From Vitrella brassicaformis CCMP3155 (taxonomy: Eukaryota; Protista; Chromerida), in contig CDMY01000385.1 of assembly GCA_001179505.1 (NCBI GenBank), positions 186,001 to 250,000 on the forward strand: 64,000 nt of DNA, read 5' to 3'. Shown here piece by piece: positions 27,158 to 48,744 of the stretch (positions are counted from its first letter, which is position 1; each line of letters opens with the position of its first letter). The notes beneath the pieces were generated by a model, which did no database searches, was not told the DNA's origin, and was given only the letters and a program-made list of their open reading frames with translations. The position numbers and the translations under genes were made by a program.

Positions 27158-29283
27158 TCATGTCTGCGGCGGTCCACACGTTGCCCTGTCCTGGTCGAGC
27201 ACCGACACACGCCCCAGCACGTCTGTCGTCACACTCGCGGGGACGCCAGCGGCAGCAGCAGGGGGCACCGTGTCGTCAGACTCCACTGTCAGGGAGCGGC
27301 CACTGGTCGATGTGGTGGCGACGGAGCGGCTCATCTCTAATGCGTTATTGTCATCAGGGGAGGGGACCGGCTTACTCTCCAAAGTCGACAAAGGGGAATA
27401 GGCCTGTTTACACGCACACAGACACGAAGAGAAGGACGCACGTGTGTTCTATAGCCTTGGGCATGTGTGTATGTCATACCATAAGTAAGAAGGTGCGGTG
27501 CGCTATGCAGGGGGTTGCTCTACCTGAGCATTGGGCGGGCGCGACTGCACTTGCCGGCTATCGTAGACGAGCACACCCAACCCGATCACCACACTGACAC
27601 ACACATCGATATCGGCACACAACCAATCAACAAACCGACAAACCACCAAACCACATCTCTTTGCGTGTTGCTGTGTTGCTGGTGCATTCATTCATTCGCG
27701 ACTTACGCGATGCCGCCGAGAGCGTTCCATGACGGGAGGCTGAGTGCGCCGGTGGGGTCGAGATGCAGCACCACCAGCAGGCAGGTCAGCAACACGGCCG
27801 TCACTGGCTGAAGTACTGATGCATTCATTCATTGCACACACAGAGGGAACGAACGATGAATGCAGCCGGGCCGGGCAGACAGACACGTCCGTGCAAGCAC
27901 AGCTAGCTACGCACCTCACTCACCTGTGTATGCCGCCACCATGGATCCATCGACGTATTTGTTCGCCCAGGTCATCAGCAGATACCTGAAGACACACACA
28001 GCACACAGCACGCACGTACAGTGAATACATACATCTTCCCTCCCCCCATGCCCATTGATTGGATCACTCACGTGGTAACAGAGCTGCCAATAACCCAATA
28101 AGCAAGCGCCCAGAGAGCGTCGGGGGGCACCCCCCAGGCAGACGGGCAGTCGGGACACACCAACTCAAGGAAGGGCTTGTTCAAGTTGACGATGAGCGCC
28201 GCCACGAGCATCATCACGGCCGCATTCATGTACGAGAAGGCTATGACGAAGGGCGACGGTATTCTATGTCGCTGCAGCAGTGGCTTGGACGCCACAAGGT
28301 AGAGGGAGGTGGACAGGCAGTTGACGAAGAACAACATATTGCCGACGAGCATCCCCCGCCAAGACTGCTGCGTGTGGGGCGTTGGGGCGCCGGCGACCAC
28401 CAGCACCACCGCCCCAAGGGTGCCCAAGGAGATGCCCACGCCCTTCATCGGGCTCATGGTCTCCTGACCCACAATGATAGCCAGTATCACCGTCATGATG
28501 GGCTGCGACGGCTGCCAACTCGCCGCGCTCGTCTCGTCCGCCATCTTGAGACCGACCAGGTAGCAGAACTGAGCACCAAACCAAACACATGAGGCGAGAT
28601 CAGACCAACAGTCGCATAGGAGAGATCCTGCGGCACACTTGTACCTGGTTGCCGAATAGGAAGAGTCCGGTGAGGAGGAATGTCCGCCAGTGCCTGTGCA
28701 CGGGCGGGATGCGGTGGTTCTTCTCGATTCCGATGGCTATCAGCAGCAGAATCGGCCCCGCGATGGCCTCCCGGATGAGTGCGAACTTGAGAACCGAACC
28801 AAGACAAGGGTCAATCAAGAGAGAGAGAAGCTTGCAGCTGGAGCAAGAAAGAAGCTTAGCTTACAAGCACGGGATTGAACTTGGGCATGCCCAGCTTCCC
28901 AACCTGCCATAGACACACGCAGAGAGAGGGCGAGAGTGGAGTGTGTCTGGGTCAGTGGCGGGTCGATTTCGGCAGCCACGCACCACAGCACCACCGCCAA
29001 AGAGCACTTGGGCGAAGATCAAAGCGCCATGCAACCTGCACACACACACACACACACAGGGACAGCCATGGTCACCACGACAATCGCTGTCTTTCAGTGT
29101 GGGGCGTTTTCATCTGACATGAGTTCTGAAGGATGTGCCTTCTCCTTCTTGCCCTTGTCCTCGCTGGGCGTGGCTGGATCTTCCATCGCCGTGGCCTCCT
29201 GCACTCAGACACACACACACGCACGGAAATCAAGACAAGATGAAGATCTTTATCACACGTACACGGGACGATCTCACCTCCAT
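27158..29283 (-). CDS. EamA/DMT-superfamily transporter (WAT1-related type), about 10 TM
   Basis: Spliced LHGALIFAQVLFGGGAVV|VGKLGMPKFNPVL|FALIREAIAGPILL...TGLFLFGNQ|FCYLVGLKMADETSAASWQPSQPIMTVILAIIVGQE...GNMLFFVNCLSTSLYLVASKPLL...|YLLMTWANKYVDGSMVAAYT|VLQPVTAVLL: two EamA repeats. Confidence 0.9.
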
Positions 29284-29477
29284 GTCGATGTCTGCTGAGG
29301 TGCGGACGCCAGCAGCACTTGTCGGCGTAAGACTGTCGGGTCCTTCAACCATCTCAGGCCATCTCAGCTAAGTACTTACTTCTTGCAACGATGCTCAGTT
29401 CCTTGCTCTGCTACCTGCTCTTGTTGCGCGATGAGCACTGCTCACCTTCCGGTCGAAATAATACGACAGGTCACCTC
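29284..29477. promoter_or_regulatory. Putative bidirectional promoter (EamA / GH97)
   Basis: 194 bp between divergent ATGs at 29283 (-) and 29478 (+). Confidence 0.45.
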
Positions 29478-32400
29478 ATGCGACTCTGGCTCGGCACATT
29501 GGCATTTCTTGCCCTTCTGGCAGGGCTTTCGGCAGCCGACAATAACGGCAAACACCCCGTGCAGCAGCAGCCGCAAGGACAGGAGGGACACACACAAGAG
29601 CACGGCGAGCTCATCAAAGGCGGTCTGGTTGGGGGGGAGGAGAAAGGCGACCACTGGGGGGACCGCCGCAAAGAGCTCAGGCTGGTGCGGGAGATCAACA
29701 AGGACGGCAAGCGGGTCAGCGACAGGATCAGCGACATCGCCGACGGGCTGACCAGGGACATCTTCCGTCCCAACGCGGGCTTACACGACGCGGAGACCGA
29801 CAAGGGCAGGGTGGTCCAGAATGACGGCCAAGGCGGCCAGAAGTTCACACTGCAGCAGCCGCCGCCGATCAAGCTCTCGGCGGCTGACAAGGCGGCCTTA
29901 TCTGTGCTGGGCGGCGACCACGAATTGCCGACCTACGAGGTGATCCTCGAGGTCGACAAAGACCAGGGGCGAGCGCTGATGTGGTCGGCGAGATACCCGC
30001 CTAAGAAGCCTGACAAGAAGAACCCGCGTTACATCATCCGCCAGTCCCCTCTGGGCATCACAGTTGACGGCATTGACCTCGGCAAGGGCGTCAAGATTTT
30101 GGCCCACGACACCACGACGGAGCAGCTGCGATACCGCACCAGGGGGAAGCACAACCAGGCGCTCAGCTACTATCAAGAGCACCGCTTCCGCATCGAGCAT
30201 GTGGAGAGCAAGAAGGAGTTCTTCCTGTTGATGCGGCTGTATCGGGAGGGCGTGGCCTTCCGCTACGCTTTCAACTGGAAGGGCGGCCACACCATCACCA
30301 GGGAGGAATCCTCCTTCAGGGTGCCCTTCAAGTCAATCGCATGGTCAGAGAGAGGACAAGCAAGAAGGCCATGAGAGAGGAGCAACAGACAACGAGATGG
30401 ATGCTGACGTACTGTACTTGTGCAGGCACTTCACTCGTGAGAGCAACGTGCCGAACGACCAAGGCAAGTTCCACTACGCCGGGCCCTGGACGTCCGCACC
30501 CGTCGAGCTCCTGGCTGACACGCAGTACCTGAAGGAGTGGCAGCGGCCCATCGGAGCCATCTACGGCCCCCCACTGCTATTCGACACAAGGCAGACCGTC
30601 CTCAACCAAAAGAGGCACGAGGGCAGCGAGTTTGAGGAGCTGCCGCCGCCTTCGCGCCGCTACCAGTACATCATGCTGACGGAGGGGGCCTTGTATGACT
30701 ACACCGGCTTTGTCTTTCGCGCACAGCCGAGGCTGGTGTTCCGGACGGACTTTGTGGTGGCGGAGATCGCCGTCCCCGGCCAGTTCATGACCCCCTGGCG
30801 GGTCGCCATCTTCGCCAGGGACCTCAACGAGCTCGTCAACCAGGACATGGTGACCAGCCTCAACCCAGAGCCGCCAAAGGAGCTCTTCCCGCATCTCCAT
30901 TCGCGGCACATCCCGCGACAGGGCGGCCTCTCGAAGGAAGACGAGCTGCCCGACTTCCCCTCGTGGATTGTCCCTGGCAGGTCTGTGTGGCGCTGGTGGT
31001 CCTCCTCCACCGGCGACCCATTGCAGGAGCTGCACATGATTAAGTGGGCGGCGGAGCTTGGCTTCGAGTACGCCACCATCGACATCGGCTGGGAGCGGTG
31101 GGGCAAGGGTGTGCCCGGCGGGGAGAGCGGGCCTGTGATCCGCACCGGCAAACACAAGGGCACGCACGTCTACGGCCTGGAAGACGACATCGAGCAAGAC
31201 TACTTTGAGGCGGCGCCACAGCGGGTCAGCAACACGACCCTGCGTCTGCCGGTCCCCCCACTCTACACCAATGCGACCAATGTGACCCTCACGCTCACCC
31301 CCGATGGACTCGGCAAGCAAGTCGAGGATGACTACTTCATCGACTGGGAGAGGGAGGCAAATCGGCAGTATTGGGAGGAGGGCGAGAACCGCTTCGTCGA
31401 TCCTTTCCACAACCCCATCCACCCCGCACTGGTCGCCGACATCGACCACGGCTTCGGAGATGTCGACTTCACCGACGACGCACAAGTGGAGGAGAACATC
31501 CCAGATGATGACTCGAGCGCCTGGCTCATCCTCAAATACCTCATCGAGTACGCCAAGGCCAAGCGCGTGAGGGTCATCGTGTGGAAGGACTACCGCGACG
31601 TCAAGACCTTCGACAAGAACGGCCGCTTTTGGCCACTGGAGGAGTACCTGGCGAAAGTGGCCAAGGTGGGGGCGTCGGGCGTCAAGATCGACTACGTGCT
31701 GTCTGAGGCGCAGGAGAGGGTGCTGTTCGAGACCGAGGCGGCCAGAATAGCCGCCCAGCACAAGCTGACCATGACCTTCCACGGCACACACAAGCCCACC
31801 GGCGAGTGGAGGAGGTTCCCAAACGAAATGACAAGAGAGGCCATATGGGGCATGGTTGGTACACACTGGCAGACAGACAGACAGACAGGATGTGTGATGT
31901 ATGCATTCGGTGTGTTCCTTCTGTCTGTCGTCGGTCAGGAGATCAACAAGATAAAGGAGCGGGCCCGCTGGGTGACGCCGAGGCACAATGCCGCCCTGCC
32001 CTTCACGCGCTTCGTCGTGGGCCACGGCGACTACACCCCATTCGTCATGAGGGCGTCCAAGAGAGACCCCACTACAATCGTATGTGCCTCACCACAATCA
32101 ACAGACAGACAGCGACACACCCACACACACACACGCCACATCTGTTTGTCTGCATCCTGCCTGTTTCTGTGTGTTGTGTGGTTGTGTTGTGTGCAGGTCC
32201 ATCAAATGGCGCTGCTCGTGGTGTTCGACTCGGCCATCCAGACGATAGCCGAGCACCCCCTGGTCCTTCTCGACTCATCCAGGCCCCACTACGCCATCCT
32301 CGACGTCGTCAAGAAGATCCCCACCCTCTGGGACGAGACAATCGTGCTGCCAGAGAGCCAAGTCGGCTCCCTGGTCGCCTTCGCCAGACGCAAGGGCGAC

Positions 32401-32664
32401 ACGTGGTTCCTCGGCATCATCAACGGCGAGTCCGGGTCGCAGAAAATCGACAGCCTGGCCCTGCCATTCATCGACAGCCACAAGGAGGGGTGGAATGCGA
32501 CTCTCATCAGCAGCAAGCCGGAGGAGATCGAGTTGAAGAGCGGCAAGAACATCGTGGTGGGTGCGGTGGAGCGAAGGGAGGAACCGTCGTTTGGCGAGAA
32601 CAAGCTGACGGAGATCAACCTCTTGGGGGGGGACGGCTTCGTGGGCGTTTTCGAGCCGCTCTGA
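29478..32664 (+). CDS. Secreted glycoside hydrolase family 97 (retaining-type signature), 4 exons
   Basis: Signal peptide MRLWLGTLAFLALLAGLSA. GH97_N: SPLGITVDG...RLYREGVAFRY and TPWRV. Barrel: PGRSVWRWW, AAELGFEYATIDIGW, YAKAKRVRVIVW, GVKIDY, FHGTHKPTGEWRRFPNEMTREAIWGM|E, LPFTRFVVGHGDYTP. GH97_C: WDETIVLPESQVGSLVAFARRKGDTWFLG. Introns at about 30343-30427, 31855-31938 and 32080-32196. Confidence 0.93.
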
Positions 32665-33672: not shown

Positions 33673-36600
33673 TCACGCGTGTCCCTCTAGCTCCCCCTCA
33701 GCCGGCGTCTCATCGGTCAAGGCACCACAATCACGAGGGCCATGCACCACCACACGTCCGCCGCCCTCCGACCCCGATGGGTGTGGTGGTTCGGGGTCGG
33801 CCAGGAGGATGCAGTTGGACGGGTGGGAGGCGTCACCAAGAGGCACGTCAGGCAAGAAGGCAAAGCCTGCACAGGGACAGACAGACCAAGAGAGAGAGAC
33901 ATGCTTATCAACTGACTCATCTGTGTGTGTGTGGGGGGGGGGGGGTCATACTTTGGCAGTGTTGGCGGCGAGAACACATGCCTTGACAGTCGGCTGGGTC
34001 AATGGCTGCCAGGTACTCCACCGCTCGGCCCGCTGCCACGCCATCCAGCCCATCAGACGACTGGCCCCGGCTGAAGCCTGCATGCACCCAGCTAGGTAGA
34101 CATGGACGCACAGCGGGCTGGCTGGTGGGTGGCTGGCTTACACCCTGCTGGTATGAGACTTGGAAACTGCTGGAACTCGCCTTCCTCCTCCTCGCCGTCT
34201 CCGTCGTCCTCCGATCGCAATGTGGTGGCGGCCGGCCTCAGCTTGCCCGCGCCACCCTTGTGCTTCGGTGCAGCCCACCGTTGGGCCTTCCCCGCCTTGC
34301 GCACCACACGGTAGACCTTGGGCTTGCCCACCATAGCCGTGACGCTCAGGCCCTTCTTGTTGACGGTGCTGCAGTCGCCCCAGAAGAGCCAGTTGCAGAC
34401 GCGTGTGCCTGGGGGTCGCATGGCGTCGGGGAGGCTTTTTGGGGGGATTTGGATTGAGTACTTTTTGCCGCTGCCGGATGAGCTCGTGACGACCAGCACG
34501 TCCGAGCCGCGGGAAAAGGCGTAGATATTGGGGGTGACCTGCAGACACACAGACACACAGACAGACAGACGGAGAAAGGGTGTTTGTTGTCTCTCGCTGC
34601 GTGAATGTGTGTGGGGCGAGTGTGATTGTTCGTACGAATCTCTGTATCTGTTCGCCTTCGAACATGCCGCTGCGACGAAACTTCGCAAGCAGCTGAGTAG
34701 CTGACATACCATGCAGATATGCATACCCATCATTCATTTCAGCCGGTGTGTCTGTCTGTCTGGATGAGCGTGCGTCGCCTGCGCACCTACCTCTATACAG
34801 GACGTGCTCGGTGTTGTATGGGTCCTCATGCTTCCACATGGGCACGCGCGAGCCGTGATAGCGAGGTTCACCGCCGGAAGCGCCTGTGAGATGAGATCGA
34901 TCGCCACATGCACTGCACACCACATCTGCCCCACCCCGCCTGCCTCTTTGTTGCTCGCCTTGCCTTGTTCGTCGCCATAATAGAGCACGGGAATGTGGAC
35001 AGCGCACATGAGCCACACGAGCGCATTCAGGTAGGCCACCTGGTCGTTCCGCACGTGCATAAACCTGGGGACGTCGTGATTGTTGATAAACAGAGCAGCC
35101 GCATGCTTGTCGTCGATAAGCGTCTTGGTGGCCGTCCATGCGTCGACCACCACGCTCATCGGCTGACGGCTGGCGAAGGCGCTACGAAGAGCAAAGGCCA
35201 GCGGGAAGTTGGTCACCTGCACGTTGAATGCAATGCGTGAATGAATGAAGCTGAGTCGGTTGGTTGACAGTTAGTTCATCTCTTTCTCGCCCACCCCGGG
35301 AATACGCTTCTGATACTTCGCGACGTGCTTCACCTCTGGCACGAAGGTCTCGCCCTGCAGCCATCCATCCATCCATCCATCCATGAGAGGGAGGGGGAGC
35401 GACATGGAGAGAGAGAATGGATGAAGGCCTGGCTGGCTGGCTACCTGCTTATTACCATGATGTAGTATTTGCTGCCGATTTGTTTGCCGATTTCGTCGAG
35501 GAATACGTCACGAAGGTACGGGATGGCGTCGGCACGGAAACCGTCTTGAGCGATCGATGAGTGAGTTGGCAGACAGCGAGACAAAAGAGCAACTGGTGGA
35601 TGTGGCCAGTCGATTTCTTGATTGTCTTGCCTACCGAAGTCGTATTCCTTGGCTTCGTCCTTCACCTGCACACACACACAGACAGACAGACAGACAGACA
35701 CACACAGAGCGAGAAGTGTGCGCATCCATCCATCCATTCATGCGACACGGAGCCGCCCACCCATTTGATGAGCCATTTGCGGACTTCTGTGTTGTCGTCG
35801 TTGAGGTCAGGGAGGTCCCACAGCTGGCACGACTGGAAGGTATCGGGCTTGGTGAACTCCACGTGACAATCAGAGGGGTGGAAGTGCTCCGGCTTGTTGA
35901 ACGGATGAAGGTGCTTACGATTCTTCTCTGGACCCATGTGATTCAGCACTGCACATAACATACGCACACACGAAAGCACCCAGTGTGTGTTAACATCGAT
36001 TGCCGGTGTATGTGTGTGTCTACCGATGTCAGCCATGACCCAGAGGCCCTTTTGGTGTGCTTCTTCGGTGAGTTTCTTGAGCTGCCTCTTGCCGCCAAAC
36101 TCATCTGACACCTTGTTGTAGTTCCGCGGCCAGAAGCCGTGATACCCACACTTGGTCTGCACACACACAGGCAAGCGTGGTCGGTCGACCAACGATCAAA
36201 TGCTTCGATACGCCTGGCATACGTTTTGAATGTGCGGCGAGATCCAGAGGGCCGTCACCTGCGTGTTTGTCATCGCAGCAGGCGATGCGATGAGAGGATC
36301 AGCCAGCCGTGACAGTGAGTCAATGAATCGTGGTGTATGTGTATGTATGTATGTATGTATGTATGGCTGACTGGCTTCATTACCCCGAGCTCGGCGATGT
36401 AGTCGAGCTTCCTCCTCAGCTCCTTGTAGCTCCCGCCGCAGAAGCCGCCCTCAGCACAGTCTGTCATGACAGTCACAACACAAGACAGACAACACAGCAG
36501 AACCAACCGAGCATGGATGGCTCCTCGTCTTGCGGATTTGTGTCCATACCTGGGTCGCACGTCACTCCAGGGTCCTTGGCGGCGAAGCGGTCTGTAACCA

Positions 36601-36795
36601 CCTGATAGATGATGCTGAAGGAGGCAAAGACAGATGCTCAGCGGGTCGTCGGCTGCGAGTTGCTCACCTTCGCCGTCCAACCCAGTCGTCGCGTGTGCGC
36701 GATTTGCCGCCAACAAGGAGGTCACCAAAGCCCCACAGCAGAAACACGAAGACCGCGAGTAGAGTCGAGTGCAGCCGCCTCTTCCTCATCCTCAT
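33673..36795 (-). CDS. Secreted alpha-amylase-family enzyme (GH13, Taka-amylase-like), C-terminal end uncertain
   Basis: Signal-like MRMRKRRLHSTLLAVFVFLLWGFG; SIYQVVTDRF; GGSYKELRRKLDYIAELG; GYHGFWP; region I ADI|VLNH; LPDL; region II DGFRADAIPY; region III M|GETF; region IV FINNHDVPRF; IPVLYYGDEQG. All three catalytic acids are present. Confidence 0.92.
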
Positions 36796-37018: not shown

Positions 37019-38255
37019 TCATTTCTTGAGTGTCGGTTTCGCAATGCCAAGCTCAATAAGACACAAAACAGCGTCACGGACGCTCTCTTCTAATGGCCGA
37101 TACTCAATGCCCAGCTCCTCTATGCTCCTGCACAGACAGGCAGACAGACAGACAGACAGACAGACAGAGAGACAGGCAGACAGACAGACAGCCGCGTACA
37201 TGCAGAGGATGGCCGACGTTGAATGGGTGTGTGCCTGCCTGGTGTTGTCGAAGGCCACTGTCATCTGCAGCTCGTCAAGGTTGTCGGGCACCTCAAACGC
37301 ATACTCAGGGACGGTCTGCTGCGCCATCGATGCCAGGATGCCCGCGGGAACTGCAGCCAACCAGCCAGCCAGCCACAATCAGCAAACATGCTTCAATGAC
37401 CGTCGCCATCTGACCGAATTCTCTGCCGGCCAGCAAGTACCGCTTCCCATCGGTATTGGGGCGCTCGGCGGCTCGAATGTGCGCAAGTGCCTGCAGACAC
37501 ACGCATGGACATCACAGCGCCAGAGATGCCGGTGTGTGTGTCGTTTATGTGCAAAAAGACCGTTTCTCGCACGTCAACGATAGGAGCTAGGATTTCCTTG
37601 TAGAAGGCCCCTGCGGATCAACAGCCACCCGCAGCACACACAACAATGGAAGGCTCGCCCATGCAGCAGGCTTGCCCTTTCTCCTCACCATGTTCGACAA
37701 GCGAGATCCCCCACTCGACCGACAATGTGTCTGGCTTCCGAGAATTTGGTGGGCCGATGACGAGGCCTGGCAAGATGGTGGTCAGCGGAATGCCGCTCTC
37801 CTCGGAATACCTCCACCCGACCTTCTCGGCTTGCACCTGACGATTGATGCTCTTGATGATGCAGGACACTTTCGCGTGTGCCTGTGCGTCTTCTTGCCTT
37901 GGAATAGTGGTACGGCGAGAGCTTGCCTCTCCCCTCCTTCTCGACCTTTTGCTGGAAGGCCGTCAAGGCGGCCGTCTTATCCGCATCGTCCATACCACGC
38001 AGAGTGCCTTTCACATGACAGCCTGCACCACGCGGGTGGCATAGGTGTCATGCAGGGAATCAAGTAGTCTTGCTCACCTTTTTGGAGCAGTTGCTCCACC
38101 AGATGCAACGCGATATATCCTGAAAGATGTATGCCACCCCAGTTGTGCCACCCAAAACAGGAATCAATCTGTATGGTACTTTTCTGCTTACCAGTCGCCC
38201 CAGTCACGCACACGGTTGCCCCGTCGAGAGGCGATGCTTGTCCTCCCTCCGGCAT
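37019..38255 (-). pseudogene. Extended SDR (dihydroflavonol-reductase/cinnamoyl-CoA-reductase-like) gene lacking its central ~100 aa; pseudogene, misassembly or truncated variant
   Basis: VCVTGATG|YIALHLVEQLLQK|GCHVKGTLR (NAD(P)-binding), then directly EGRGKL-SPYHYSK|VQAEKVGW...TTILPGLVIGP, IVDVRET|ALAHIRAAERP...RYLL, FDNTR|SIEELGIEYRPLEESVRD. There is no room for the ADL...HxAS...GTxNV...TSS segment. One GC-AG intron (37837-37897). Confidence 0.65.
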
Positions 38256-38364
38256 CGATATCCTGCAAAAAAGTGAAGGTCTCCTTGGCGAGCTACGGGC
38301 GAAATTATAGTACACGTAACGGCTGGAGCTATACGTGGATATGCACAAGGGAGGCTTGGACGTC
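38256..38364. promoter_or_regulatory. Putative bidirectional promoter (SDR / subtilase)
   Basis: Only 109 bp between divergent ATGs at 38255 (-) and 38365 (+). Confidence 0.45.
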
Positions 38365-41300
38365 ATGGGGAGATGCCTCATCGTGGGGCTGTCCATATTT
38401 AACCTGGCAGGTGGGCGACGAGACTGCAACATAACAGCAGACACAAACAAATAGGCAACGGACACGCTCTTGCCTTGTGTGTGTGTCTGCAGCTGCTCAA
38501 TGGAGGCCGCCGAAGCCGCCACCAAAGCTCGACAGCACCCTCCACTCTATACACCGGTTACGGGCCGACTCGGCGGCTTTTCAGAACTCCCCGTGGGCGG
38601 CCTCCGGCAAAAGCCTGATGGTCCACTTCAAAAACGAGACCCACGTCATGATCGACGCTGTGGCCGCAGAGAGCGGCGAAGAGCTGCTCCGAGAGCTCGA
38701 GGAAATGGGCCTCGTCGAGGGCTCACAGTTCTCCCACTTTGTCAGCGGCTTCCTGCCGATTGAGGCGATTGAAAAGTTGAGCGAGATGCCGTCGCTGCAG
38801 TACGTCGGGCCTGCGGCGGTGACCACTCAGGGTGCTCTCGATATGGCTCTGAGGAAAGGGGCTGATTTGTTGCCGGCGATTGACAAGAAGCTCATGTTGG
38901 AGCAGGAGGACAGGAAGAACCTGGCGGGGAGTGAGAAAGAGAGGGACCCCAAGGCACGGGGGGACGTCATTTCTGAAGCTGACTCGGCCTTGCGGACGTC
39001 CAAGGCTCGCGAGGAGATGGGCCTCACGGGGAAGAACCTGGCAATCGGCATTCTGTCCGATTCTTTCAATCAGGTGGGAGAAAGGCGACCGTCAGGTCTG
39101 CGAGTGTGTGTGTGTGTGTGCGTTCTGTCACCGCTTTGTGTGATCGTGCTGACTGACAACCAGGGCGGGGACAAGTTGCTGACGACGGCAGAGGACGATA
39201 TGAAAAACGGCGACCTGCCTCCTAAAGAGATGATAGAGATGCTCAAGGAGGGGCCATCGGGCAGCGGCATGGACGAGGGACGCGCAATGTACGAATGGAT
39301 GGATGGTAGATGGAACAGACACACGCCACAATGCTATCCCTCTGTCTGCCTCTGTGTGTGTCTGTGTGTGTAACGGTCAGGATGCAGCTCATTCACGAGT
39401 AAGCACAGCACCTTGGTCAGAGAGGCAGCCACTTAAAGGTGTCCAGCCACGTATGTGTCCACATGTCTTGTCTTTGCAGCATTGTCCCCGAATCGAGAAT
39501 AATATTCCATTCGGCCTTCGGGGGGCTGGCTGATTTCGCAAAGGGCATCATCCGCCTGTCCAAGGCTGGAGCCGACGCAATCGTCGACGATGTGGTACGC
39601 CACACACACCGCACCGCGCCAAGGCGCGCACAAAGGCGGCACGACAGGCATCCGTCCGTCTGTGTGTCAGATATACTACCGAGAGCCCATGTTCATGGAC
39701 GGCCTCATCGCGCAGGCAGTCGATTTCGTGGCCAAGAAGAAAAATATCCCCTACTTCAGCGCGGCCGGCAACAACGGCAAGAAGGGCTACATGTCTGAGC
39801 TGCGAATCACCGACAAGAAGGCGCACGACGGCCGCCTGCACAACTTCGACTCACGGCCGGGCAAAATGGCCGACAAGCTCAAGATCAAGGTGCCGCTGGG
39901 CTCGCGAGCGCTGCTGGTGATGCAGTGGGACGAACCGTACTTCAGCGCGACGCAGAAGAAGTCGGCGTCGTGCCAGGCCGACCTGGACGCCTACCTGATG
40001 AACAAAAAGGGCGAGGTGGTGTCCTATGGCGGCAACACTGACAACCTCAACAACGACCCGGTATGTCAGAAGGAATGCGAGACAGACTGCATGGAAGCAA
40101 GGATGGATGGATGCTCTCATTGTGTTTGTGTTGGCTCGTGTTGTGTTGTGTTGTGTTGTGGTGTGTTGTGTGTGGTGTGTAGGTGGAGATGTTTGAGTTC
40201 CAAAACGACGGGACGATCAAGGACAAGGCCGAGGCCGACCAAGTCATCCTGAAAAAACGCAAGGGCAAAGGCAAGGGCAAAGGCGACGACGAGGAGGAAG
40301 AAGACGACGACCAGGAGCAGGAGGAGGAGTTCTATTTGCAAATCGTCCAGGCAGGCGGCAAAGGCAAACCCAAACACGTCAAGTTTGTCCTCTACGGCTC
40401 AGCCAACGTCGAGATTGAACGAATCGGCTCAGCAGCAGATGATGACGAACAGACCGACGAAGACCGAGACGAAGACGAGGCCCATCCCTTCAACCTGGCC
40501 GACGCATCCACGAGCACCCTTTACGGCCATGCCAACGCCGAGATGGCAGTGGCTGTGGGTGCGATCTTCTACGGCAAGACGCCCGAGTTTGACGACAATG
40601 AGGTTGACTGGGTGCCGGAATCGTTCTCGTCTTACGGGCCACAGCCCATTACCATGGATGAGGCGGGCAAGCGGCTTAAGGAACCCATTGTGCGGAACAA
40701 ACCCGATATCGTCGCACCCGACGGGTGAGAGAATGACGGACGTATGGGTCGTCTCGTCTCCCTGCCCTCCTGCCTACCTGCCTACCTGCCTGTATGTGTC
40801 TCTGTGACGTTGTGTGTGTGAGTGCAGGCCCAACACGTCTTTTTTCATTCCTGGCCTCGACATCGAGCATGACGGTCACTTCAATTTCATGGGTACGCCG
40901 ACTGCACACATGCCGCCGATAGTCCAGCTGTGTGTAATGTCTCCCTCGTGTGTGGGTGTCCCTGTGTGAGTGCAGGTACGTCAGCTGCGGCCCCTAGTGC
41001 TGCTGCAACGGCGCTGATGATGAAACAGGCGAACCCAGACATAACTGTCGAGCAGATCAAGACGATACTCGTCGACACGGCGATTGACATGCACGGTGGG
41101 TCCACACGCACTCGTGTCAGACAGACAGACAGAGGTACAGGCACCTTGCCACACGACCTGCATGTGTGTGTCCATCCAGATCCGCTGGCCGAGGACCCCA
41201 ACAAGGGAGTTGGTTTCGACTGGGGGACTGGTGCGGGTCTGATCGACGGCTGGACTGCCGTGCAGGAGGCGGCCAAGCTGGCTGAGGAAGACGATGAAGA

Positions 41301-41478
41301 CGAAGGCAAGCAGAAGGGCAAGCGCAAGCCAAGAGGGGGGAAGAAGAAACAAGACAAGAAGGAAGACAAAGACGAGGATAAGAAGGAGGATGAAGACGAG
41401 AAGGAGGAGAAAGAGGATGACGAGAAAGAGGAGGAGAAGCCGGAGATGGCAACCGAGAGGAGGACACGATCACGATAG
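38365..41478 (+). CDS. Secreted subtilase (S8/S53 clan SB) of bacterial DEGRAM type with a charged C-terminal tail
   Basis: Signal MGRCLIVGLSIFNLA|AA; prodomain; IGILSDSF; DEGRAM|MQLIHD|IVP; AIVDDV; YFSAAGNNG (oxyanion Asn); YGHANA...VGA; FSSYGP; KPDIVAPDG; F-M|GTSAAAPSAAATAL (Ser at 40981); GFDWGTGAGLIDG. About 10 exons, including an 18-nt micro-exon (39381-39398). Confidence 0.9.
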
Positions 41479-42018
41479 CACCTGTTCGTGTGCATGGGTC
41501 GGTCGGTCGGTTTGGAGGACCGATGGATGGACGGATAATTACATGTGTCTTGCTAGCAGCCAGTGGGGCGGGCGGGCGGGGGTGTGGCTTTCCTCTCTTC
41601 TTGTTTTTGCCCTCCCTCGCTCCCGCCCGTGTGACGGCGTGTGCGTGGCTGTTTGGGCGGGTGTGGTGTTGATTACTGGTTGGGCTTTAAGTGCGGGCGG
41701 GTTGTGAGTGAGTCATGCGGCCCTCACTAAGTGTATTGTGGGCTGCGGTAAGATAGCCAGCCCTGTCAGTCATTCGTTGCACTACTAGCATCATCTCATG
41801 GTCCATCATCTTTTTTCCTGTTGCTGTGCCCGCCCACGCCCGTGGGCTGAGCAAGCGACTGCATCGATCCATCTTACCCTCACTCTCCTCTTTGTGCGTG
41901 TGTGAGGTATGTGTGTCTGCCTAAAGGTCTCGGTGGTTAAAGACAAAATGGTTGCTTGAATTAAGAACACTTGGAAGCCGTGTACTATTATTTCCGCTCC
42001 GCTCCACTCAAGCCAGAA

Positions 42019-44823
42019 ATGGCTTTGGAGTGGCGCTTGCTTTCCCTCCGGGTAGCCCTGGGGCTCCCGCTGGCCATCGTGTTGCTCCTGTCACTCGCTG
42101 CGGCCGCTGCCTCGGAGGACGCGCAAACAACGGTCACCGTAAGAGCGCTGCAAAGTGACGTCGTGGACGCCGAGGAACTCAAGAAGGAGAGGAGCCACAA
42201 GAAAAGCCGCGGCAAGGCCAAGAAGAAGAGAGAGAAAAAGAAAGTCAGGGAAGATGACGACAAGGCGGAGGACCCGAGTTCTTACGTGGAGCTTCCTGGG
42301 GAGCGGGTGATGCTGTGGCACAAGATGACGTTCGACCTCACCGGCCCAGAGGTCGACGAGATGGACGATGAGAACCCCTTCGAGGCCTACCGCATCGACC
42401 TCAAACTCACCCACAAGGACCTCGACAAGCCCCTCAAGGTGCCCTGCTACTTCGCTGCCGACGGCGATGCGGCCGAGACGTCTGCCACGGGTGGCGACCA
42501 GTGGCGGTGCCACTTCATGCCCATCAAGACGGGCACCTGGAAATACAAGCTCAAGTTCACGCAAGGCGACAGGGTGGCCGTGGACAAGAAGCAGGAGGGG
42601 GAGCCGGCGGGCTTCTTCGACGGCGCGAGTGGGGCGTTTGAGGTGCTCCCAAGCGACAAGAAGGGGAAGGACAGTAGGAGAATGGGGCTGCTGCGACACG
42701 TGGGAGAGAGATACCTCAAGTTTGCGGTGGGTGAGATATGGCTGATGGATGGATGGATGGCTGAGAGAAAGAGCCTTCGTCTCTTTCTTTCTGTTGTGTC
42801 GTGGCCTGCAGGGCACTGACGAGTATTTCATCAAGGCGGGAGTGGACGGGCCCGAGAACCTGCTGGCCTACGAGGGCTTCGACAACACGCCCAACTACCT
42901 AAACCTCAGGAAGACCTACCCCAAGCACATCGAACACTGGAAAGAGGTACATGCACAATCACAGCCCCACAATGCACACGGCACCCCTCAAGTGTGTTTG
43001 TCGATATCTGTCTGCCTGTCACGTGCCTCCCTCGCTCAGGGTGACCCGACGTGGCAGGGCGGCAAGGGCAAGGGCCTCATCGGTGCGCTCAACTACCTCG
43101 ACTCTGTTGGCCTCAACGCCTTCTCCTTCCTCACCTTCAACGACCAGGGGGACGACAGAAACGTCTTCCCATATGTCACGGTCGGTCACACGACCTCCAT
43201 TCATCCGGACAGCCCCTTGACGCTGTGTGTGTGTGTGCCTCGATTGGCCGATGCAGGCAAAGGAGCTGGGTCGTTTCGACGTGAGCAAGCTGGCGCAGTG
43301 GGAGAAGGTGTTTGAGCACGCGACCAAACTGGGGCTGACGATGCACTTCAAGACGCAGGAGGCCGAGAGCATCAAGATCCACGGCAAGGAGAAGCTGGAG
43401 GACTCGCGCAGGCTCTACTACAGAGAGCTGCAGGCGAGGTTCGGACACCATGCCAACATCATATGGAACATCGGTATGTGGGCGGCCATACTCGCAGCGA
43501 CCATCTGTGCATGTGTGTGTGTGTGTGTGTGTGTGTGGATTTGTTGGTGTCGTGTTGCGTGTCAGGTGAGGAGACGACGATGCCGGTGGAGGCCATCCGT
43601 GATTCGGCCGAGTACTGGCGGTCCATCGACCCCTACGAGCACCCGATGGTCGTCCACACCCACTACCCACAGATATGGGAGAAATACGTACCCCTCATGG
43701 GCGAAAACTCGCCACTGTGAGCGACATTCACCACACAACACCATACAAAACAGAAAGACAAACGACTCGCCACATATGGTGTGTCCACTGCAGTGACGGC
43801 CCATCGATGCACGCCCGTGAGCCCTTCGGCGTCAACAACCTGACCCGTGCGCTGGTGAGGATGTCCCATGAGAAGGGCAAGGCGTGGGCGGTCATGAACG
43901 ACGAGCAGGGCCCCTGGTACAAGGGCGTCCTGCAGGACGCACACGACCCCGACCACGACGTGCTGCGCCAGCAGCTGGTGTGGGGCAACCTGCTGGCCGG
44001 CGGGGCGGGCTTCGAGTTCTACTTCGGGTGGGGGTGGAACATCCACAAGATGGCCAACGAGACGCAGGTCAAGCACTCGTTCGATGACGACTCTCTCAAT
44101 GTCGAGAAGAAACCGCCCCCAGGCAACCTCATCCAGACCGGCGAGTCCGGCAATGACGATAACGGCGACGGCCAACTCGACGACCTGCCGGCTCTCGAGA
44201 GCTTAGCGTCGCTGGAGGGTGACAGAGACAATGCCCCCGTGGCGCACTCGCTCTCTGGCTGCCCTGAGTGGGTGATCTGTTCGGCGTGCAGCGACATTAC
44301 CTGCGAGGACTTCACCAACCGGCACAACATGTGGCTGCAGGCCGCCAAGGCCATCGAGTTCTTCAAGAAACCCATCAAGTTGCCGGCGTCAATGGCCTCG
44401 CAAGTCGGCCCTTACGACAGCAATGGCGGCGACGAGAGCGCCCTTGACTACCGCCTGCCGTTCTGGGCCATGTGGGACGACAACAACATCACAGCGGCCG
44501 AGGACGACTTCGCTTTGGTCAACGACGACACGTACCTGATCATGACGCCCACAAGGGAGAAGAGTGCCCTCTCTTTGGCCCTGCCGTCTGGCCGCAACTA
44601 CGCCGTTGCGTGGTGGAACCCCAAAGAGGGCGGGCCACTGGTGAGCGGCGATCATGTGGACATGCCCGCCCTCAGCGCAGCCGGGGAAGGGGCGGGGAGC
44701 ACGGCAGCCTCATCTCTTGTGGAGCTCCCCTTCCCACAAGAGATGATGGTGACCAGCAAAGAGGGAGAGATGAAGCACCCGGCCGAGTTCGTGGCGCTCG
44801 TAAGGGCCGTGCCGGATGGATAG
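42019..44823 (+). CDS. Secreted DUF5060 + DUF4038-like (clan GH-A type) putative glycoside hydrolase with a C-terminal beta domain
   Basis: Signal peptide MALEWRLLSLRVALGLPLAIVLLLSLAAAAA. Ig-like DUF5060: WHKMTFDLTGP...NPF...YFAADGDAAETSATGGDQWRCHF.P.KTGTWKY. Catalytic-type: DGPENLLAY, KGKGLIGALNYL, RFDVSKLAQWEKVF, YYRELQARFGHH..IIWNIG|EE, NDEQGP, WGNLLAGGAGFEFYFG, DITCEDF. C-terminal YAVAWWNPKEGG. Confidence 0.85.
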
Positions 44824-45719: not shown

Positions 45720-47227
45720 ATGAAGCTCCTCGCGTGTGTGGTGGTGTCCCTCCTGCCGCTGTGCTTCTGCCGGCCGCCCGAGGCGCCGAACGTGGTGGGC
45801 ACCTTTGTAGGAGACCCTATCCTCGGTAAGCTGATTCAGACAAGGCAGAGAACGACGGGCTGGCCGGCTGACCCCCCCGGTTGTGTGTGTGGTTCTGCAG
45901 GCTCCCCTATTGCTGACCTGATCAAAGCTGGTCACGGTGACGACGTGATTTTGCCTTTCGCAGACTCAGACGAGATCACCACTGACGAACTTTTTGAGCA
46001 AGGAAGGGCGGCCGGTAGCACGGACCCGCTCAACAACCGAATCGACGCAGCGTAAGCTCTGTAAAGCACCGCACGCACACATTGCCATCCCCACACAGTT
46101 CATTCTTGCGGGTCGTGTCAGAACCAAGAATGATTACATTCTGTACGAAAGCTCCGCGCTCTTTGACGACCGGCCTGAGGTGCGGGACCGAACCCCGTGC
46201 TCCTCACTGCTGATGTGTGTCTGTGTCTGCAGAACTTTCTGACAGACTTTGAGTCGGGCATTAGTACCATTGGTTTCAGTGGCAACCAGTTCCCTTTCGC
46301 CTCCCCCCTCTTCCCGGATGGCGATGTGCACGTCTTTGACAAAGACGACTTTGGGCTCGACAAAGAGGTGCGTACAAGCAGACAATGAAGCAGCCCACAC
46401 AGCTACCTCGAGGCCACTTTCCTGGTGATCGTGTGCAGGTGACGTTCTGCCAAATCTGTATCGACGCCGATAAGAACGGCGAATGGACCACTTTTGACGA
46501 GGATGGCAACCCTTCCTTCAATAGAGAAGTGTCGATTTCCCTGAGGGCTTTACGGATTTCTCCACCACCTTTATTGATGAGGAGTCAGGCTCAAAGTGCC
46601 CGGTGAGTGCTGAGCAAAGAGGTTTGGGGCACCGCCACTGTGAATGTGTGTGCTGGACTCAGGCACGTCCCAATGTCATTGTCTTGCTTGGCCCCTGCGA
46701 CAGCGACTGCGAGCCCGCCGACTTTGGCAGACTGCAAACCTTTAACGCCGCTTTTGCAGCGCAGCTGGTAGACGTATCGACACTCCACTTCTTGCATCGC
46801 ACGTTTGCCTTTGGTTTCTAGATTGCCAACAATTGGGGCACCGGTGCCGGCAAGGCGGGCATCTTCGTGTATTTCAACGTGAACGAAGAGCCCGTAGATG
46901 CGGGTTTCAACTTGAACAGAGGCGTGTACAGAGCTGATCTCAGTTCAACGTCGTCCCGCCAGGATGTTATCTGGCGGGATGTCTCTACCTGCCCTCCTGA
47001 GGAGGGCAACGCGCTGGGCGGACAGGTGGCCGTTCGAGCAGCCGTGATAGCAGACGCCGTCGATCAAGGGAGGTGCAGGCCGCTCACAGCCTTCGGTGTT
47101 GATCTTGTGGAGGGTGCTATCGTCCTTGGGTTCATCCGGCGCGCCAATAGGGACCTCGAAAACTACGAAGCTGGCAACTTTCTGTTCGGTGGGTCGTTAA
47201 GAGTGCCAGTGTCTATAGACGGACGCT

Positions 47228-47278
<51 letters not shown>

Positions 47279-48744
47279 AGCCCGTATTCGTGTTGGCGAT
47301 GAGAGCAACAACATCATGCTTGGATCTGACCATCCCGACTTCTTCAGCTCTGGGGGAGGGTATAAATACACACCACACAAAAACGGCTGCAGACAGACGC
47401 TGTGTGACCTCATGGCTGTGTATGCGTGCGTTGTGTTGCCCCGCAGCAATGACATGATCAACTTGGGGCCTAACACGAACTTTGTCGCGACTGGCGGGGG
47501 CCATGACAAGATCGTCTTCTTCAAGAACACGTTGGAGCAAGAGCCTGCCGTTTCGGGGGGCAGTGTGAGCACACTCGTGTGGCACATGAGCCGGCCGGCC
47601 GTCATCCCTTCTCTCTCTCCGTGTGTGTGTGTGTGTGTGCAGGGCCTGGAGAACAGATTCCTCGATTTCGACGTCACTCGCGATAAGTTCGTATTCGAGT
47701 AAGCCATCACAATTCACGCATCAGAGACTCGTGCATGCGTCGGGTCGATCTCGAGATCTGTCTGTCTGTCTGTCTCTGTCTGCCCTGTGTCACGAAACAT
47801 GCAGCGCCAATGACTACGGCCTTCGGCACATCAGTTTCTGCAACACCAAATTCGGCAGTGGCTCTGGGCCCCAGAATGATGATCTCAGCCCAGAGGAGCC
47901 TATCGGCGATTGCAACGTTATCGTGGTCCAGAACAGCGATAATGACGACGACGAAGTAGGAGAGGGATACACAACAACCCGGTGTGCATTTCGCTGCCCT
48001 ACATCATTCTGTCTCAGACAACTGGCTTCGGTGCCGGCGCGGCTGCCAATCTCGGTAAGCCCAAAAGGCAGAAAACGCGCTGCGCTCACAGTAAATGAAC
48101 GCCTGTCTGCATGACCTGCCTCGTGTGTCTGCCAACAGTTGCCGACGCCATTCAGGCTGAAGGCGACAACACAGACAGCAGAGCGGGGCTCATCCTTTAC
48201 TTCAACAGCCGATTGGCGCTCAATCGCCTCTTCTGGAGCTCTGACATCACGAAGCGCACGACGGACGACCCCCGCCCCGAAATCATCATCCTCGGCAGAT
48301 TCACCGAGCGCGATGGCGTGGGCGATGAGGAGGAAGGGACCATCGATGGCCAGGACGCGGTCGATAATCTGCCCTTCTGGCAGAAGAGAAACTTTATGGT
48401 GCTTAAGGTGAGTAAAGGGAGACAAGGATACAAAGATACAGACAAGCAGCAAGGGCATGGCATGTGGCCGTCTCTGTGGTGTCCTTAAGGACAACGACTT
48501 CGAGGCCAACGCCCTCTCGGTCGCTAAGGGCGGCGATGCGGACGAGACCGCAATGGAGAAAGACGCCAAGAAATTCGGTGGGCAGTCGATTATTGATTGC
48601 ATTTCGCTTCGTACCGCCCCGCACTTTTCGCGTTTCGTGTTTGCTTGAAAAGGTGACTTCGGCGAGCTGTGCCTCTTGCCGCCCAAGAATGAGACCAACA
48701 AGCTGATGAGCAACACCAACGTGAGGGAGGGGGAGAAGAAGTGA
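45720..48744 (+). CDS. Secreted protein with two copies of a domain resembling the C-terminal region of cyanobacterial RTX/Ca-binding proteins
   Basis: Signal MKLLACVVVSLLPLCFC. Copy 1: FDKDDFGL..VTFC...PNVIVLL...FNAAFAAQL|IANN...KAGIFVYFN...NLNRGVYRADL. Copy 2: FEANDYGL..ISFC...CNVIVVQNSDNDDDE|TTGFGAGAAANL|VADAI...RAGLILYFNSRLALNRLFWSSDI. Linker NDMINLGPNTNFVATGGGHDKIVF is RTX-like. About 12 exons; 3' end uncertain. Confidence 0.7.

What the first reader, a model, noticed from the sequence alone, without database searches (positions are those of the whole stretch)
27158..48744. Cluster of secreted, mostly bacterial-type hydrolases resembling a eukaryotic polysaccharide-utilisation locus
Seen: five of six consecutive genes from 29.5 to 48.7 kb encode N-terminal signal peptides (GH97, GH13 amylase, subtilase, DUF5060 hydrolase, duplicated-domain protein). 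An EamA transporter is head-to-head with GH97. Genes on both sides of the block are intracellular housekeeping or regulatory genes. Established: GH13 plus GH97 is the SusA/SusB pairing of the Bacteroides starch-utilisation locus, and GH97, DUF5060 and DEGRAM-type subtilases are best known from bacteria. Inference: this may be a co-regulated extracellular digestion or cell-wall-remodelling cluster in a photosynthetic alveolate, assembled partly from horizontally acquired genes that have since gained host-style introns.
Basis: partly seen in the sequence, partly recalled or inferred. Interest (0 to 1): 0.78.

Follow-up and report, generated by a model that had tools for sequence, protein, structure and literature searches.

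The report
Secreted hydrolase gene neighbourhood in Vitrella
In the coral-associated alga Vitrella brassicaformis, five neighbouring intron-containing genes do encode proteins with secretion signals, and three belong to mainly bacterial families, but nothing tested shows that they act as one sugar-degrading unit like a bacterial polysaccharide-utilisation locus.

Summary
The window is Vitrella brassicaformis contig CDMY01000385.1. At 27158-48744 lie seven genes: an EamA transporter, GH97, a GH13 amylase, a cytosolic Rossmann/epimerase-like gene, an S8 subtilase, a DUF5060 glycosidase-like gene and a 644-aa internally duplicated protein. Five of the last six start with a signal-peptide-like leader.

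- GH97, the 'DEGRAM' subtilase and the DUF5060 protein have essentially only bacterial relatives plus Vitrella paralogues. They carry spliceosomal introns, confirmed by transcript contigs for the subtilase only.
- The GH97 has the retaining (alpha-galactosidase-type) motifs, not those of SusB.
- The GH13 is the fungal/protist GH13_1 type.
- Genes lie on both strands with their own promoters, and a cytosolic gene sits among them.
- No shared upstream motif was found.
- Three GH97 paralogues and a subtilase paralogue elsewhere have no such neighbours.
- Five of six signal peptides is expected by chance somewhere in 22,817 genes if at least 10% carry one. Three glycosidases in six genes is borderline (0.06-0.45 expected).

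Transcript-contig depths hint that GH13, subtilase and DUF5060 rise together, but this is weak. The scan has flagged similar secreted or GH97 "clusters" elsewhere in this genome.

Verdict: a real neighbourhood whose functional unity is unproven.

The parts
27158..29352 (-). EamA/DMT-family multi-pass transporter gene (annotated product 456 aa), head-to-head with GH97 (125 bp between start codons)
Evidence: Pfam EamA on exon ORF 28071-28736. Public gene call with PF00892. My approximate model has at least 8 TM-like segments.
29478..32664 (+). GH97 glycosidase gene, 967 aa, 4 exons (29478-30343, 30426-31854, 31939-32079, 32197-32664). It has a signal-peptide-like leader, retaining-type motifs KIDY and HG, and an insertion of about 140 aa at 31102-31521.
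   Evidence: Pfam GH97_N, Glyco_hydro_97 and GH97_C. tblastn of paralogues. The model reproduces the annotated length. Motifs. Best PDB match 3A24.
33673..36795 (-). GH13 alpha-amylase gene (annotated 644 aa, about 16 short exons), with a basic and hydrophobic leader. Conserved regions I-IV with the catalytic Asp/Glu/Asp are present. It is TAKA/GH13_1-like.
   Evidence: Pfam Alpha-amylase on two exon ORFs. Best PDB matches are 6SAV/6SAU/6SAO and TAKA-amylase. Two 5' introns are seen in transcript contigs. My model gives 630 aa against 644 annotated, so exon details are approximate.
37019..38255 (-). Interleaved Rossmann-fold (extended SDR/epimerase-like) gene, 241 aa, no leader, head-to-head with the subtilase (85 bp between start codons)
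   Evidence: Public call with faint Epimerase/GDP_Man_Dehyd hits. The N-terminus carries the GxxGxxG motif. Spliced transcripts are present in all four runs.
38341..41478 (+). S8 'DEGRAM-type' subtilase gene, 774 aa (CEM08603.1), 10 exons including an 18-nt micro-exon at 39381-39398. It has a signal-peptide-like leader, motifs ILSDSF, DEGRAM and GTSAAAP, and a Lys/Glu-rich tail.
   Evidence: Exact mapping of P0393 to the DNA. Every intron is confirmed by transcript contigs. Pfam Peptidase_S8.
42019..44823 (+). DUF5060 plus apiosidase-like (DUF4038/GH140-related) putative glycosidase gene, 793 aa, 6 exons, with a signal-peptide-like leader followed by a Lys-rich linker
   Evidence: Pfam DUF5060. 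A weak PF13204 hit on the public product. Colinear with bacterial-type DUF5060 proteins of 618-661 aa at 41-57% identity in the N-terminal half. The model reproduces the annotated length.
45720..48744 (+). Gene for a 644-aa secreted protein without a Pfam family. It has two related modules and RTX-like GGxGxD bits. Function unknown; no hydrolase signature.
   Evidence: Public gene call. Leader. Internal duplication z = 5.6. No Pfam hit and no usable Atlas lead. My exon model gives 611 aa against 644 annotated, so it is approximate.

Best explanation
This is a real stretch of the Vitrella brassicaformis nuclear genome. Seven independent, monocistronic, intron-containing genes lie side by side, and five of them send their products into the secretory pathway through N-terminal signal peptides.

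The products are a mixed set:
- a retaining-type GH97, most likely an alpha-galactosidase-like exo-glycosidase
- a GH13_1 alpha-amylase of the eukaryotic digestive ('phagotroph') type
- a bacterial-type S8 peptidase
- a bacterial-type DUF5060 apiosidase-like putative glycosidase
- a duplicated RTX-like protein of unknown function

Shown: each gene is transcribed from its own promoter on either strand. Inferred: each protein is exported separately, to the wall or medium or to a lysosome-like vacuole.

The adjacency is best read as a loose neighbourhood of secretome genes in a very compact genome rich in bacterial-derived secreted enzymes. It does not read as a dedicated locus for one glycan. 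GH97, the subtilase and DUF5060 descend from old, separate bacterial acquisitions that have since gained introns, leaders and low-complexity linkers. The amylase does not.
For: - Gene content and coordinates.
- Leaders.
- Splicing and expression of the subtilase, the epimerase-like gene, the GH13 5' end and the DUF5060 5' end.
- GH97 is retaining type: KIDY/HG motifs in it and in all 120 best homologues, against the published motif rule. Its best PDB match is alpha-galactosidase 3A24 at 3.7e-25, while the alpha-glucosidase entries 5HQ4-5HQC (PspAG97A) and 8WG0-8WG2 match only the C-terminal domain. A bacterial homologue sits beside galT, galK and epimerase genes.
- The four Vitrella GH97s form one clade (SH-aLRT 100) on a long stem among bacterial sequences. 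This points to an old single origin, not a recent package.
- GH13 is closest to fungal/TAKA amylases. GH13_1 is described as a vacuolar 'phagotrophic' enzyme present in ciliates, chromerids and dinoflagellates.
- The nearest named bacteria differ by gene: GH97 Paenibacillus, Planctomycetes and Lentisphaeria; DUF5060 Planctomycetota, Phycisphaerae and Acidobacteria; S8 Cyanobacteria and Pseudomonadota.
- Paralogue loci lack the other families.
- Head-to-head pairs with short spacers are the norm. The median intergenic distance is 92 bp, and the subtilase is equally tightly paired with the cytosolic gene.
- There is no shared upstream k-mer above shuffles.
- Chance expectation.
Against: - Three glycosidase-type genes within six genes is uncommon, with 0.06-0.45 windows expected genome-wide.
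- In four transcript assemblies the contig depths of GH13, subtilase and DUF5060 were about equal to the interleaved epimerase-like gene in run X7. They were 0.02-0.3 of it in X8 and 0-0.45 of it in X1 and X2. That would fit co-variation, although the tool warns that contig depth cannot rank genes.
- One GH97 paralogue (L003) is followed by two signal-peptide trypsin-like genes. Unchecked scan notes list many other 'secreted clusters' in this genome. A genome-wide tendency of secretome genes to cluster is therefore not excluded.
Confidence: 0.6

Rival explanations
1. A functional, co-regulated 'digestive' or wall-remodelling gene cluster. The five secreted products are induced together, for example for osmotrophic or mixotrophic feeding on external glycans and proteins, or for sporangium wall opening. 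Selection keeps the genes adjacent.
For: - The genes are contiguous and carry leaders.
- Three glycosidase-type genes in six is borderline improbable.
- GH13, subtilase and DUF5060 contig depths rise and fall together relative to the interleaved gene in four transcript assemblies.
- Another GH97 locus has secreted proteases next to it.
- The scan lists other secreted or GH97 clusters in this genome (unchecked).
Against: - The substrates are heterogeneous (alpha-galactoside, starch, protein, unknown).
- There is no regulator or shared upstream motif.
- Strands are mixed and a cytosolic gene is interleaved.
- The arrangement does not recur at paralogue loci.
- Contig depth is explicitly unreliable and there are only 4 runs.
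- No Chromera orthologues appeared among the best GH97 or subtilase hits, so conservation of the arrangement could not be shown.
Confidence: 0.25
2. Clustering by descent. Several of the bacterial-type genes (GH97, S8, DUF5060, RTX-like protein) arrived together on one piece of bacterial DNA and have stayed adjacent while gaining introns.
For: - Four of the genes are of bacterial type and adjacent.
- A cyanobacterial DEGRAM peptidase carries RTX repeats at its C-terminus, and an RTX-like protein lies two genes from the subtilase.
Against: - The nearest named bacterial groups differ by gene.
- The GH97 is one of four deep Vitrella paralogues (34-36% BLASTP identity over about 57% of the query; up to 46% over 465 aligned columns) forming one clade, so it arose by old duplication within the alga.
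- The two bacterial contigs inspected show no GH97, DUF5060 or S8 co-occurrence.
- tblastn of 151 DEGRAM-family proteins hit nothing outside the subtilase gene.
- A eukaryotic-type GH13 and a cytosolic gene are interleaved.
Confidence: 0.05
3. A starch-breakdown module (amylase plus alpha-glucosidase, Sus-like) acting on the alga's own storage starch or in the plastid.
For: GH13 and GH97 lie one gene apart, and GH97 includes alpha-glucosidases such as SusB.
Against: - The GH97 has the retaining alpha-galactosidase-type motifs, not the SusB type.
- Myzozoan starch is cytosolic and its catabolic amylase is GH13_6, whereas GH13_1 is treated as a vacuolar 'phagotrophic' enzyme.
- Both proteins have signal peptides. 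The mature GH13 domain starts about 10 residues after its leader, and the sequence after the GH97 leader is acidic and Gln-rich. Neither leaves room for a plastid transit peptide.
Confidence: 0.03

Closest known systems
Bacteroides starch-utilisation system (Sus) and polysaccharide-utilisation loci in general
   Same: Adjacent genes for exported glycosidases, including a GH13 and a GH97, and a transporter gene next to the GH97.
   Different: There is no SusC/SusD pair and no sensor or regulator. There is no operon: both strands are used, each gene has its own promoter and all contain introns. The GH97 belongs to the retaining subfamily, unlike SusB (BtGH97a, inverting). The GH13 is GH13_1-like. 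A protease, a protein of unknown function and a cytosolic gene are mixed in.
BtGH97b (BT1871, PDB 3A24), a retaining alpha-galactosidase of Bacteroides thetaiotaomicron
   Same: It is the best solved match to the window's GH97. The nucleophile motif (K/M)(I/V)D(F/Y), the HG motif and the acid/base Glu are conserved.
   Different: The match is only 91 bits. The algal protein has a long N-terminal low-complexity extension, an insertion of about 140 aa in the barrel, introns and a eukaryotic signal peptide. Its substrate has not been tested.
Fungal/TAKA-type GH13_1 alpha-amylases (PDB 6SAV, 6SAU, 6SAO, 2GUY/7TAA) and the GH13_1 'phagotroph' amylases of ciliates, chromerids and dinoflagellates
   Same: These are the best solved matches for two separate exons. 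Conserved regions I-IV and the LPDL region are present, and the enzyme is secretory. The preprint 10.64898/2026.09.25.754361 reports GH13_1 in chromerids.
   Different: I could not build a tree, so subfamily assignment rests on best matches. The gene has a C-terminal extension with no detected domain.
Bacterial 'DEGRAM-motif' S8 peptidases (e.g. MDY6899543.1 from Cyanobacteriota; Atlas clusters from Pseudomonadota)
   Same: Colinear from the propeptide to the catalytic Ser, with shared ILSDS, DEGR(A/G)M, YFSxAGN, YGH and GTSAAAP blocks. The nearest Atlas clusters are 97-100% bacterial.
   Different: The algal genes have 9 introns, a eukaryotic leader and Lys/Glu-rich inserts, and they lack the RTX or PPC tails of many bacterial members. 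No member of the family appears to be characterised (no paper holds the motif).
Bacterial DUF5060 plus DUF4038/apiosidase-like (GH140-related) proteins
   Same: Same domain order and colinear alignment. The family has more than 8000 members; the few hits that carry an organism name are all bacterial, and most are unnamed metagenomic sequences.
   Different: Activity is unknown even in bacteria. The closest solved chain is only a 'putative glycoside hydrolase', 4N0R, at E = 0.009.

Membership tests
Polysaccharide-utilisation locus (Sus-like system) | Adjacent SusC-like TonB-dependent transporter and SusD-like binding protein genes | tested here: not met
   No such family appears among the public gene calls with Pfam hits for window 28341-51478 or in my ORF scans. 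The only transporter is an EamA/DMT protein.
Polysaccharide-utilisation locus (Sus-like system) | Co-transcription or common regulation by a linked sensor or regulator | tested here: inconclusive
   Genes lie on both strands and are spliced as separate mRNAs. There is no regulator gene and no shared upstream k-mer. Contig depths hint at co-variation but are unreliable.
Polysaccharide-utilisation locus (Sus-like system) | Enzymes that together degrade one glycan | tested here: not met
   The set is a retaining alpha-galactosidase-type GH97, a GH13_1-type amylase, an S8 peptidase, an apiosidase-like protein and a protein of unknown function. These are heterogeneous specificities by homology; no assay was done.
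SusB-type (BtGH97a, inverting) GH97 alpha-glucosidase | K(T/S)GY motif with Gly at the nucleophile position and HE motif with the base Glu508 (Gloster et al. 2008) | tested here: not met
   The window GH97 has KIDY and HG, as do all 120 best homologues. The motif definitions are from PMC2670981.
Retaining GH97 subfamily (BtGH97b-like) | (K/M)(I/V)DF-type nucleophile Asp, HG motif, conserved acid/base Glu | tested here: met
   KIDY, HG and the Glu aligned with Glu470 of 3A24 are all present. Tyr replaces Phe after the Asp.
GH13 alpha-amylase family | Conserved regions I-IV with catalytic Asp (region II), Glu (region III) and Asp (region IV) | tested here: met
   The LNH, GFRADA, GET and NNHD blocks are found in the modelled exons. 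Pfam Alpha-amylase hits two exon ORFs.
Peptidase family S8 | Asp-His-Ser triad in the order D, H, S with an oxyanion Asn | tested here: inconclusive
   Pfam S8 is above its cut-off but covers only the C-terminal part. The Asp block, the Asn (AGN) and the Ser (GTSAAAP) are present. The canonical HGTH block is replaced by DEGRAM, and a conserved His lies in a YGH block instead.
Eukaryotic metabolic or functional gene cluster | Three or more non-homologous adjacent genes of one pathway that are co-regulated | tested here: inconclusive
   Adjacency of non-homologous genes is met. A common pathway is not shown. Co-regulation was not testable with contig data.
Horizontally acquired bacterial genes domesticated in a eukaryote | Nearest relatives bacterial, patchy eukaryotic distribution, host-type introns and leaders, integration in a eukaryotic contig | tested here: met
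   Met for three genes. GH97. S8. DUF5060. Introns are confirmed by transcript contigs for the subtilase and modelled for GH97 and DUF5060; the genes sit in a 453-kb algal contig. Not met for GH13. Donors are unresolved.

The most novel reading that the evidence does not exclude
Vitrella may organise part of its secretome into co-regulated neighbourhoods of unrelated hydrolase genes. These would be largely built from anciently acquired bacterial genes. This block and the other GH97 or secreted clusters flagged in the genome would then be eukaryotic analogues of digestive loci, used for osmotrophic feeding or wall turnover.
Probability: 0.18. Interest if true: 0.6.

Novelty: new member of a known kind. 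Interest (0 to 1): 0.3.

Why it matters
If the neighbourhood were shown to be co-regulated, it would be a rare example of a non-biosynthetic functional gene cluster in a protist. It would also be a clue to heterotrophic or wall-remodelling abilities in a free-living relative of apicomplexan parasites.

As it stands, three points are useful.
- A mainly bacterial enzyme family (retaining GH97) has multiplied in a chromerid, alongside domesticated bacterial S8 and DUF5060 genes.
- The amylase next to them is the eukaryotic GH13_1 digestive type, not a Sus partner.
- In a genome with a median intergenic distance of 92 bp and many secreted proteins, adjacency and head-to-head pairing alone are weak evidence of function.

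Tried and rejected
- **Sus pairing.** Rejected by the GH97 motif test and the GH13 best matches.
- **Recurrence test.** I fetched the loci of three GH97 paralogues and one subtilase paralogue. None has GH13, S8 or DUF5060 neighbours.
- **Single-package transfer.** The bacterial contigs of the closest DUF5060 and GH97 homologues show no co-occurrence. DEGRAM-family proteins hit nothing else in the window.
- **Shared promoter motif.** None was found above shuffles, but the regions are short, so this is a weak negative.
- **Chromera synteny.** This could not be done. No Chromera protein appeared among the 120 best GH97 hits or the 10 named subtilase hits, and the collections searchable by homology hold no eukaryotic genomes.
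- **A poorly spent search.** The protein search with bacterial homologue P0122 returned only close bacterial relatives. It gave neither the algal protein nor other eukaryotes.
- **The 644-aa protein.** The Atlas search with one exon gave no usable lead, and Pfam gave nothing.
- **Left flank.** Pfam on large ORFs gave nothing.
- **Plastid targeting.** Rejected by inspecting the sequence after the leaders.
- **Joined spliced models.** For GH13, DUF5060, GH97 and the 644-aa protein, the joined-protein searches were therefore left out. Joined models were assembled only inside sandbox scripts from coordinates, to check annotated lengths, leaders and the internal repeat.


Full report
**What is there.** The window is part of Vitrella brassicaformis CCMP3155 contig CDMY01000385.1. 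The locus fetched through the subtilase protein (L004, contig 214341-237478) is letter-identical to window 28341-51478. Its public gene calls, with precomputed Pfam hits, are:
- EamA (456 aa, minus strand, start codon at 29352)
- GH97 (967 aa, 29478-32664 +)
- Alpha-amylase (644 aa, 33673-36795 -)
- an epimerase-like protein (241 aa, 37019-38255 -)
- Peptidase_S8 (774 aa, 38341-41478 +)
- DUF5060 with a weak apiosidase hit (793 aa, 42019-44823 +)
- a 644-aa protein without Pfam (45720-48744 +)

Before I had that annotation, my own Pfam scans of stop-free exon ORFs found GH97_N/Glyco_hydro_97/GH97_C, EamA, Alpha-amylase, DUF5060 and Peptidase_S8 at the same places.

I trained a small splice-aware predictor on five exactly mapped Vitrella genes. 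It reproduced the annotated lengths of GH97, the subtilase and the DUF5060 gene exactly. It was approximate for GH13 (630 against 644 aa), the last gene (611 against 644 aa) and the epimerase-like gene (236 against 241 aa, with two of its predicted introns differing from the transcript joints).

**Expression and introns.** Contigs of four public runs from three studies are spliced transcripts. They confirm every intron of the subtilase gene, including an 18-nt micro-exon at 39381-39398. They also confirm six introns of the minus-strand epimerase-like gene and the first two introns of GH13. So for the subtilase the claim 'bacterial-type genes with host-style introns' rests on transcript evidence; the GH97 and DUF5060 introns are modelled.

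**Signal peptides.** No SignalP was available. I translated the first 45 codons of each annotated gene. GH97, GH13, the subtilase, the DUF5060 protein and the 644-aa protein each begin with one or more basic residues, an uncharged hydrophobic core of 11-20 residues and small residues at a plausible cleavage site. The very basic GH13 leader could instead be a signal anchor. The epimerase-like protein starts with its Rossmann motif and has no leader.

What follows the leaders does not look like a plastid transit peptide. The GH13 catalytic domain starts about 10 residues later, and the other leaders are followed by acidic or Lys-rich linkers.

**Is it more than chance?** Vitrella has 22,817 genes and a median intergenic distance of 92 bp (Woo et al. 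2015).
- A run of at least 5 of 6 signal-peptide genes is expected 1.3, 3.1 and 9.1 times per genome at signal-peptide fractions of 10, 12 and 15%. Chromerid plastid proteins also carry signal peptides, and about 4 of 22 background genes in the paralogue loci looked signal-peptide-like.
- Three glycosidase-type genes within six is rarer, at 0.06-0.45 expected windows for 0.5-1% GH genes. The 1% figure is from the abstract of PMC1249566 listed.
- The EamA-GH97 head-to-head pair (125 bp) carries little weight. The subtilase is paired even more tightly (85 bp) with the cytosolic gene, and all three GH97 paralogues are head-to-head with unrelated genes.

**GH97.**
- The best protein hits are three Vitrella paralogues (34-36% identity), followed by bacterial and metagenomic GH97s. 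Named ones are from Paenibacillus, Planctomycetes, Lentisphaeria and Verrucomicrobia.
- In a maximum-likelihood tree of 75 sequences the four Vitrella proteins form one clade (SH-aLRT 100) on a long stem. This agrees with an earlier follow-up note of the scan (s1-226978).
- Gloster et al. 2008 define inverting GH97s (SusB = BtGH97a) by K(T/S)GY and HE motifs, and retaining ones by (K/M)(I/V)DF and HG. The window's enzyme has KIDY and HG, as do all 120 best homologues.
- Its best solved match is the retaining alpha-galactosidase 3A24. The inverting alpha-glucosidase chains match only the C-terminal domain.
- A bacterial homologue lies next to galT, galK and a UDP-sugar epimerase.
- The SusA/SusB analogy therefore fails at the subfamily level.

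**GH13.** Two separate exons match fungal amylases best (6SAV, 6SAU, 6SAO, then TAKA-amylase). That these entries are fungal GH13_1 enzymes is from my own knowledge, except TAKA-amylase, which the output names. A 2026 preprint reports GH13_1 amylases in ciliates, chromerids and dinoflagellates. It treats them as vacuolar 'phagotrophic' enzymes, distinct from the cytosolic starch pathway, whose amylase is GH13_6. This gene is thus of eukaryotic type and unlikely to act on the alga's own cytosolic starch.

**Subtilase.**
- An exhaustive HMMER search with exon 7 found the gene's own product, a Vitrella paralogue (CEM30124.1), and otherwise bacterial or metagenomic proteins. The named ones were cyanobacterial.
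- 111 of the 151 sequences examined (the 150 listed hits plus the window's own P0393) carry the DEG[RK][AGS][ML] motif.
- A cyanobacterial member is colinear from propeptide to catalytic Ser.
- The nearest Atlas clusters, by features (0.98) and by structure (TM 0.70), are 97-100% bacterial.
- Pfam S8 covers only the Ser half. The usual HGTH block is replaced by an invariant DEGR block, and a conserved His sits in a YGH block. No paper mentions the motif.

**DUF5060 gene.** It aligns colinearly with proteins of 618-661 aa from intron-free, gene-dense metagenomic contigs, carrying DUF5060 plus Apiosidase-like or Collagen_bind_2 domains. The family has more than 8000 close members; the named ones are from Planctomycetota, Phycisphaerae and Acidobacteria. 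No characterised relative was found.

**Last gene.** It has a leader, RTX-like Gly-rich bits and a significant internal duplication. It has no Pfam, Atlas or tblastn link. It is not demonstrably a hydrolase.

**Tests of the cluster idea.**
- Paralogue loci (three GH97, one subtilase) do not repeat the arrangement. One GH97 paralogue is followed by two signal-peptide trypsin-like genes.
- The two bacterial contexts inspected do not contain the combination.
- No upstream k-mer is shared by four or five of the secreted genes above shuffles.
- Contig depths in four transcript assemblies put GH13, subtilase and DUF5060 at roughly the level of the interleaved gene in X7 and far below it in X8, X1 and X2. 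This is compatible with co-variation, but the tool states that contig depth cannot rank genes, and there are only four runs.
- Chromera synteny could not be examined.

**Conclusion.** The sequence facts are right. The bacterial ancestry of three genes, and possibly the RTX-like one, is supported. The PUL/Sus reading is not. The most likely description is a chance or loosely maintained neighbourhood of separately expressed secretory genes in a compact genome rich in bacterial-derived secreted enzymes. A genuinely co-regulated digestive or wall-remodelling cluster remains possible at about one in four.

The scan has already flagged similar groupings on other DNA of this genome. Examples are GH97-GH31-GH97 (s1-212092), GH16 plus two GH97 (s1-226978) and FAD oxidoreductase plus GH97 (s1-235903, s1-221881). 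Whether secretome genes cluster genome-wide is the question worth testing.

Noticed in passing
window 39164-39398 and 40183-40724 (protein P0393 residues 254-265 and 545-551): The 'DEGRAM' S8 family lacks the canonical HGTH catalytic-His block. In 108 aligned members D254-E255-G256-R257, D301-D302 and N337 are invariant, and a His in a YGH block (H549) is 95% conserved. The catalytic arrangement may differ from classical subtilisins. No paper holds the motif.
   Followed up: partly
window 39381-39398: An 18-nt micro-exon in the subtilase gene, flanked by canonical GT..AG introns and present in transcript contigs of two runs.
   Followed up: yes
window 31102-31521: An in-frame insertion of about 140 aa inside the GH97 catalytic barrel. 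It is absent from the three Vitrella paralogues and from bacterial homologues. It is kept as coding in the model that reproduces the annotated 967 aa.
   Followed up: partly
L003:6451-18874 and L008:107-11935: GH97 paralogue P0003 is head-to-head with a PF12831 FAD_oxidored gene and is followed by two trypsin-like genes with leaders. The bacterial GH97 homologue P0005 has a PF12831 FAD_oxidored gene 8 kb upstream and galT, galK and epimerase genes beside it. This may mean a conserved FAD-oxidoreductase/GH97 association, which scan notes s1-235903 and s1-221881 also flag.
   Followed up: no
window 41479-42018: A transcript contig of run X8 runs from the subtilase's last exon to 41976, within about 45 bp of the DUF5060 start codon. 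This is either a very long 3' UTR or read-through. A contig across two genes does not prove one transcript.
   Followed up: no
window 37835-37897: One joint in the minus-strand epimerase-like gene is reported with ends CC..TG rather than CT..AC, in all four runs. It may be a non-canonical intron or an alignment shift.
   Followed up: no
window 42110-42300 and 41280-41470: Lys/Glu-rich low-complexity stretches follow the DUF5060 leader and end the subtilase. They are absent from the bacterial homologues and look like host-specific additions to the acquired genes.
   Followed up: no
P0252 (cyanobacterial homologue) versus window 45720-48744: A cyanobacterial DEGRAM peptidase carries nine RTX repeats at its C-terminus. 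The window has an RTX-like duplicated protein two genes downstream of its DEGRAM peptidase. No sequence link was detected.
   Followed up: partly
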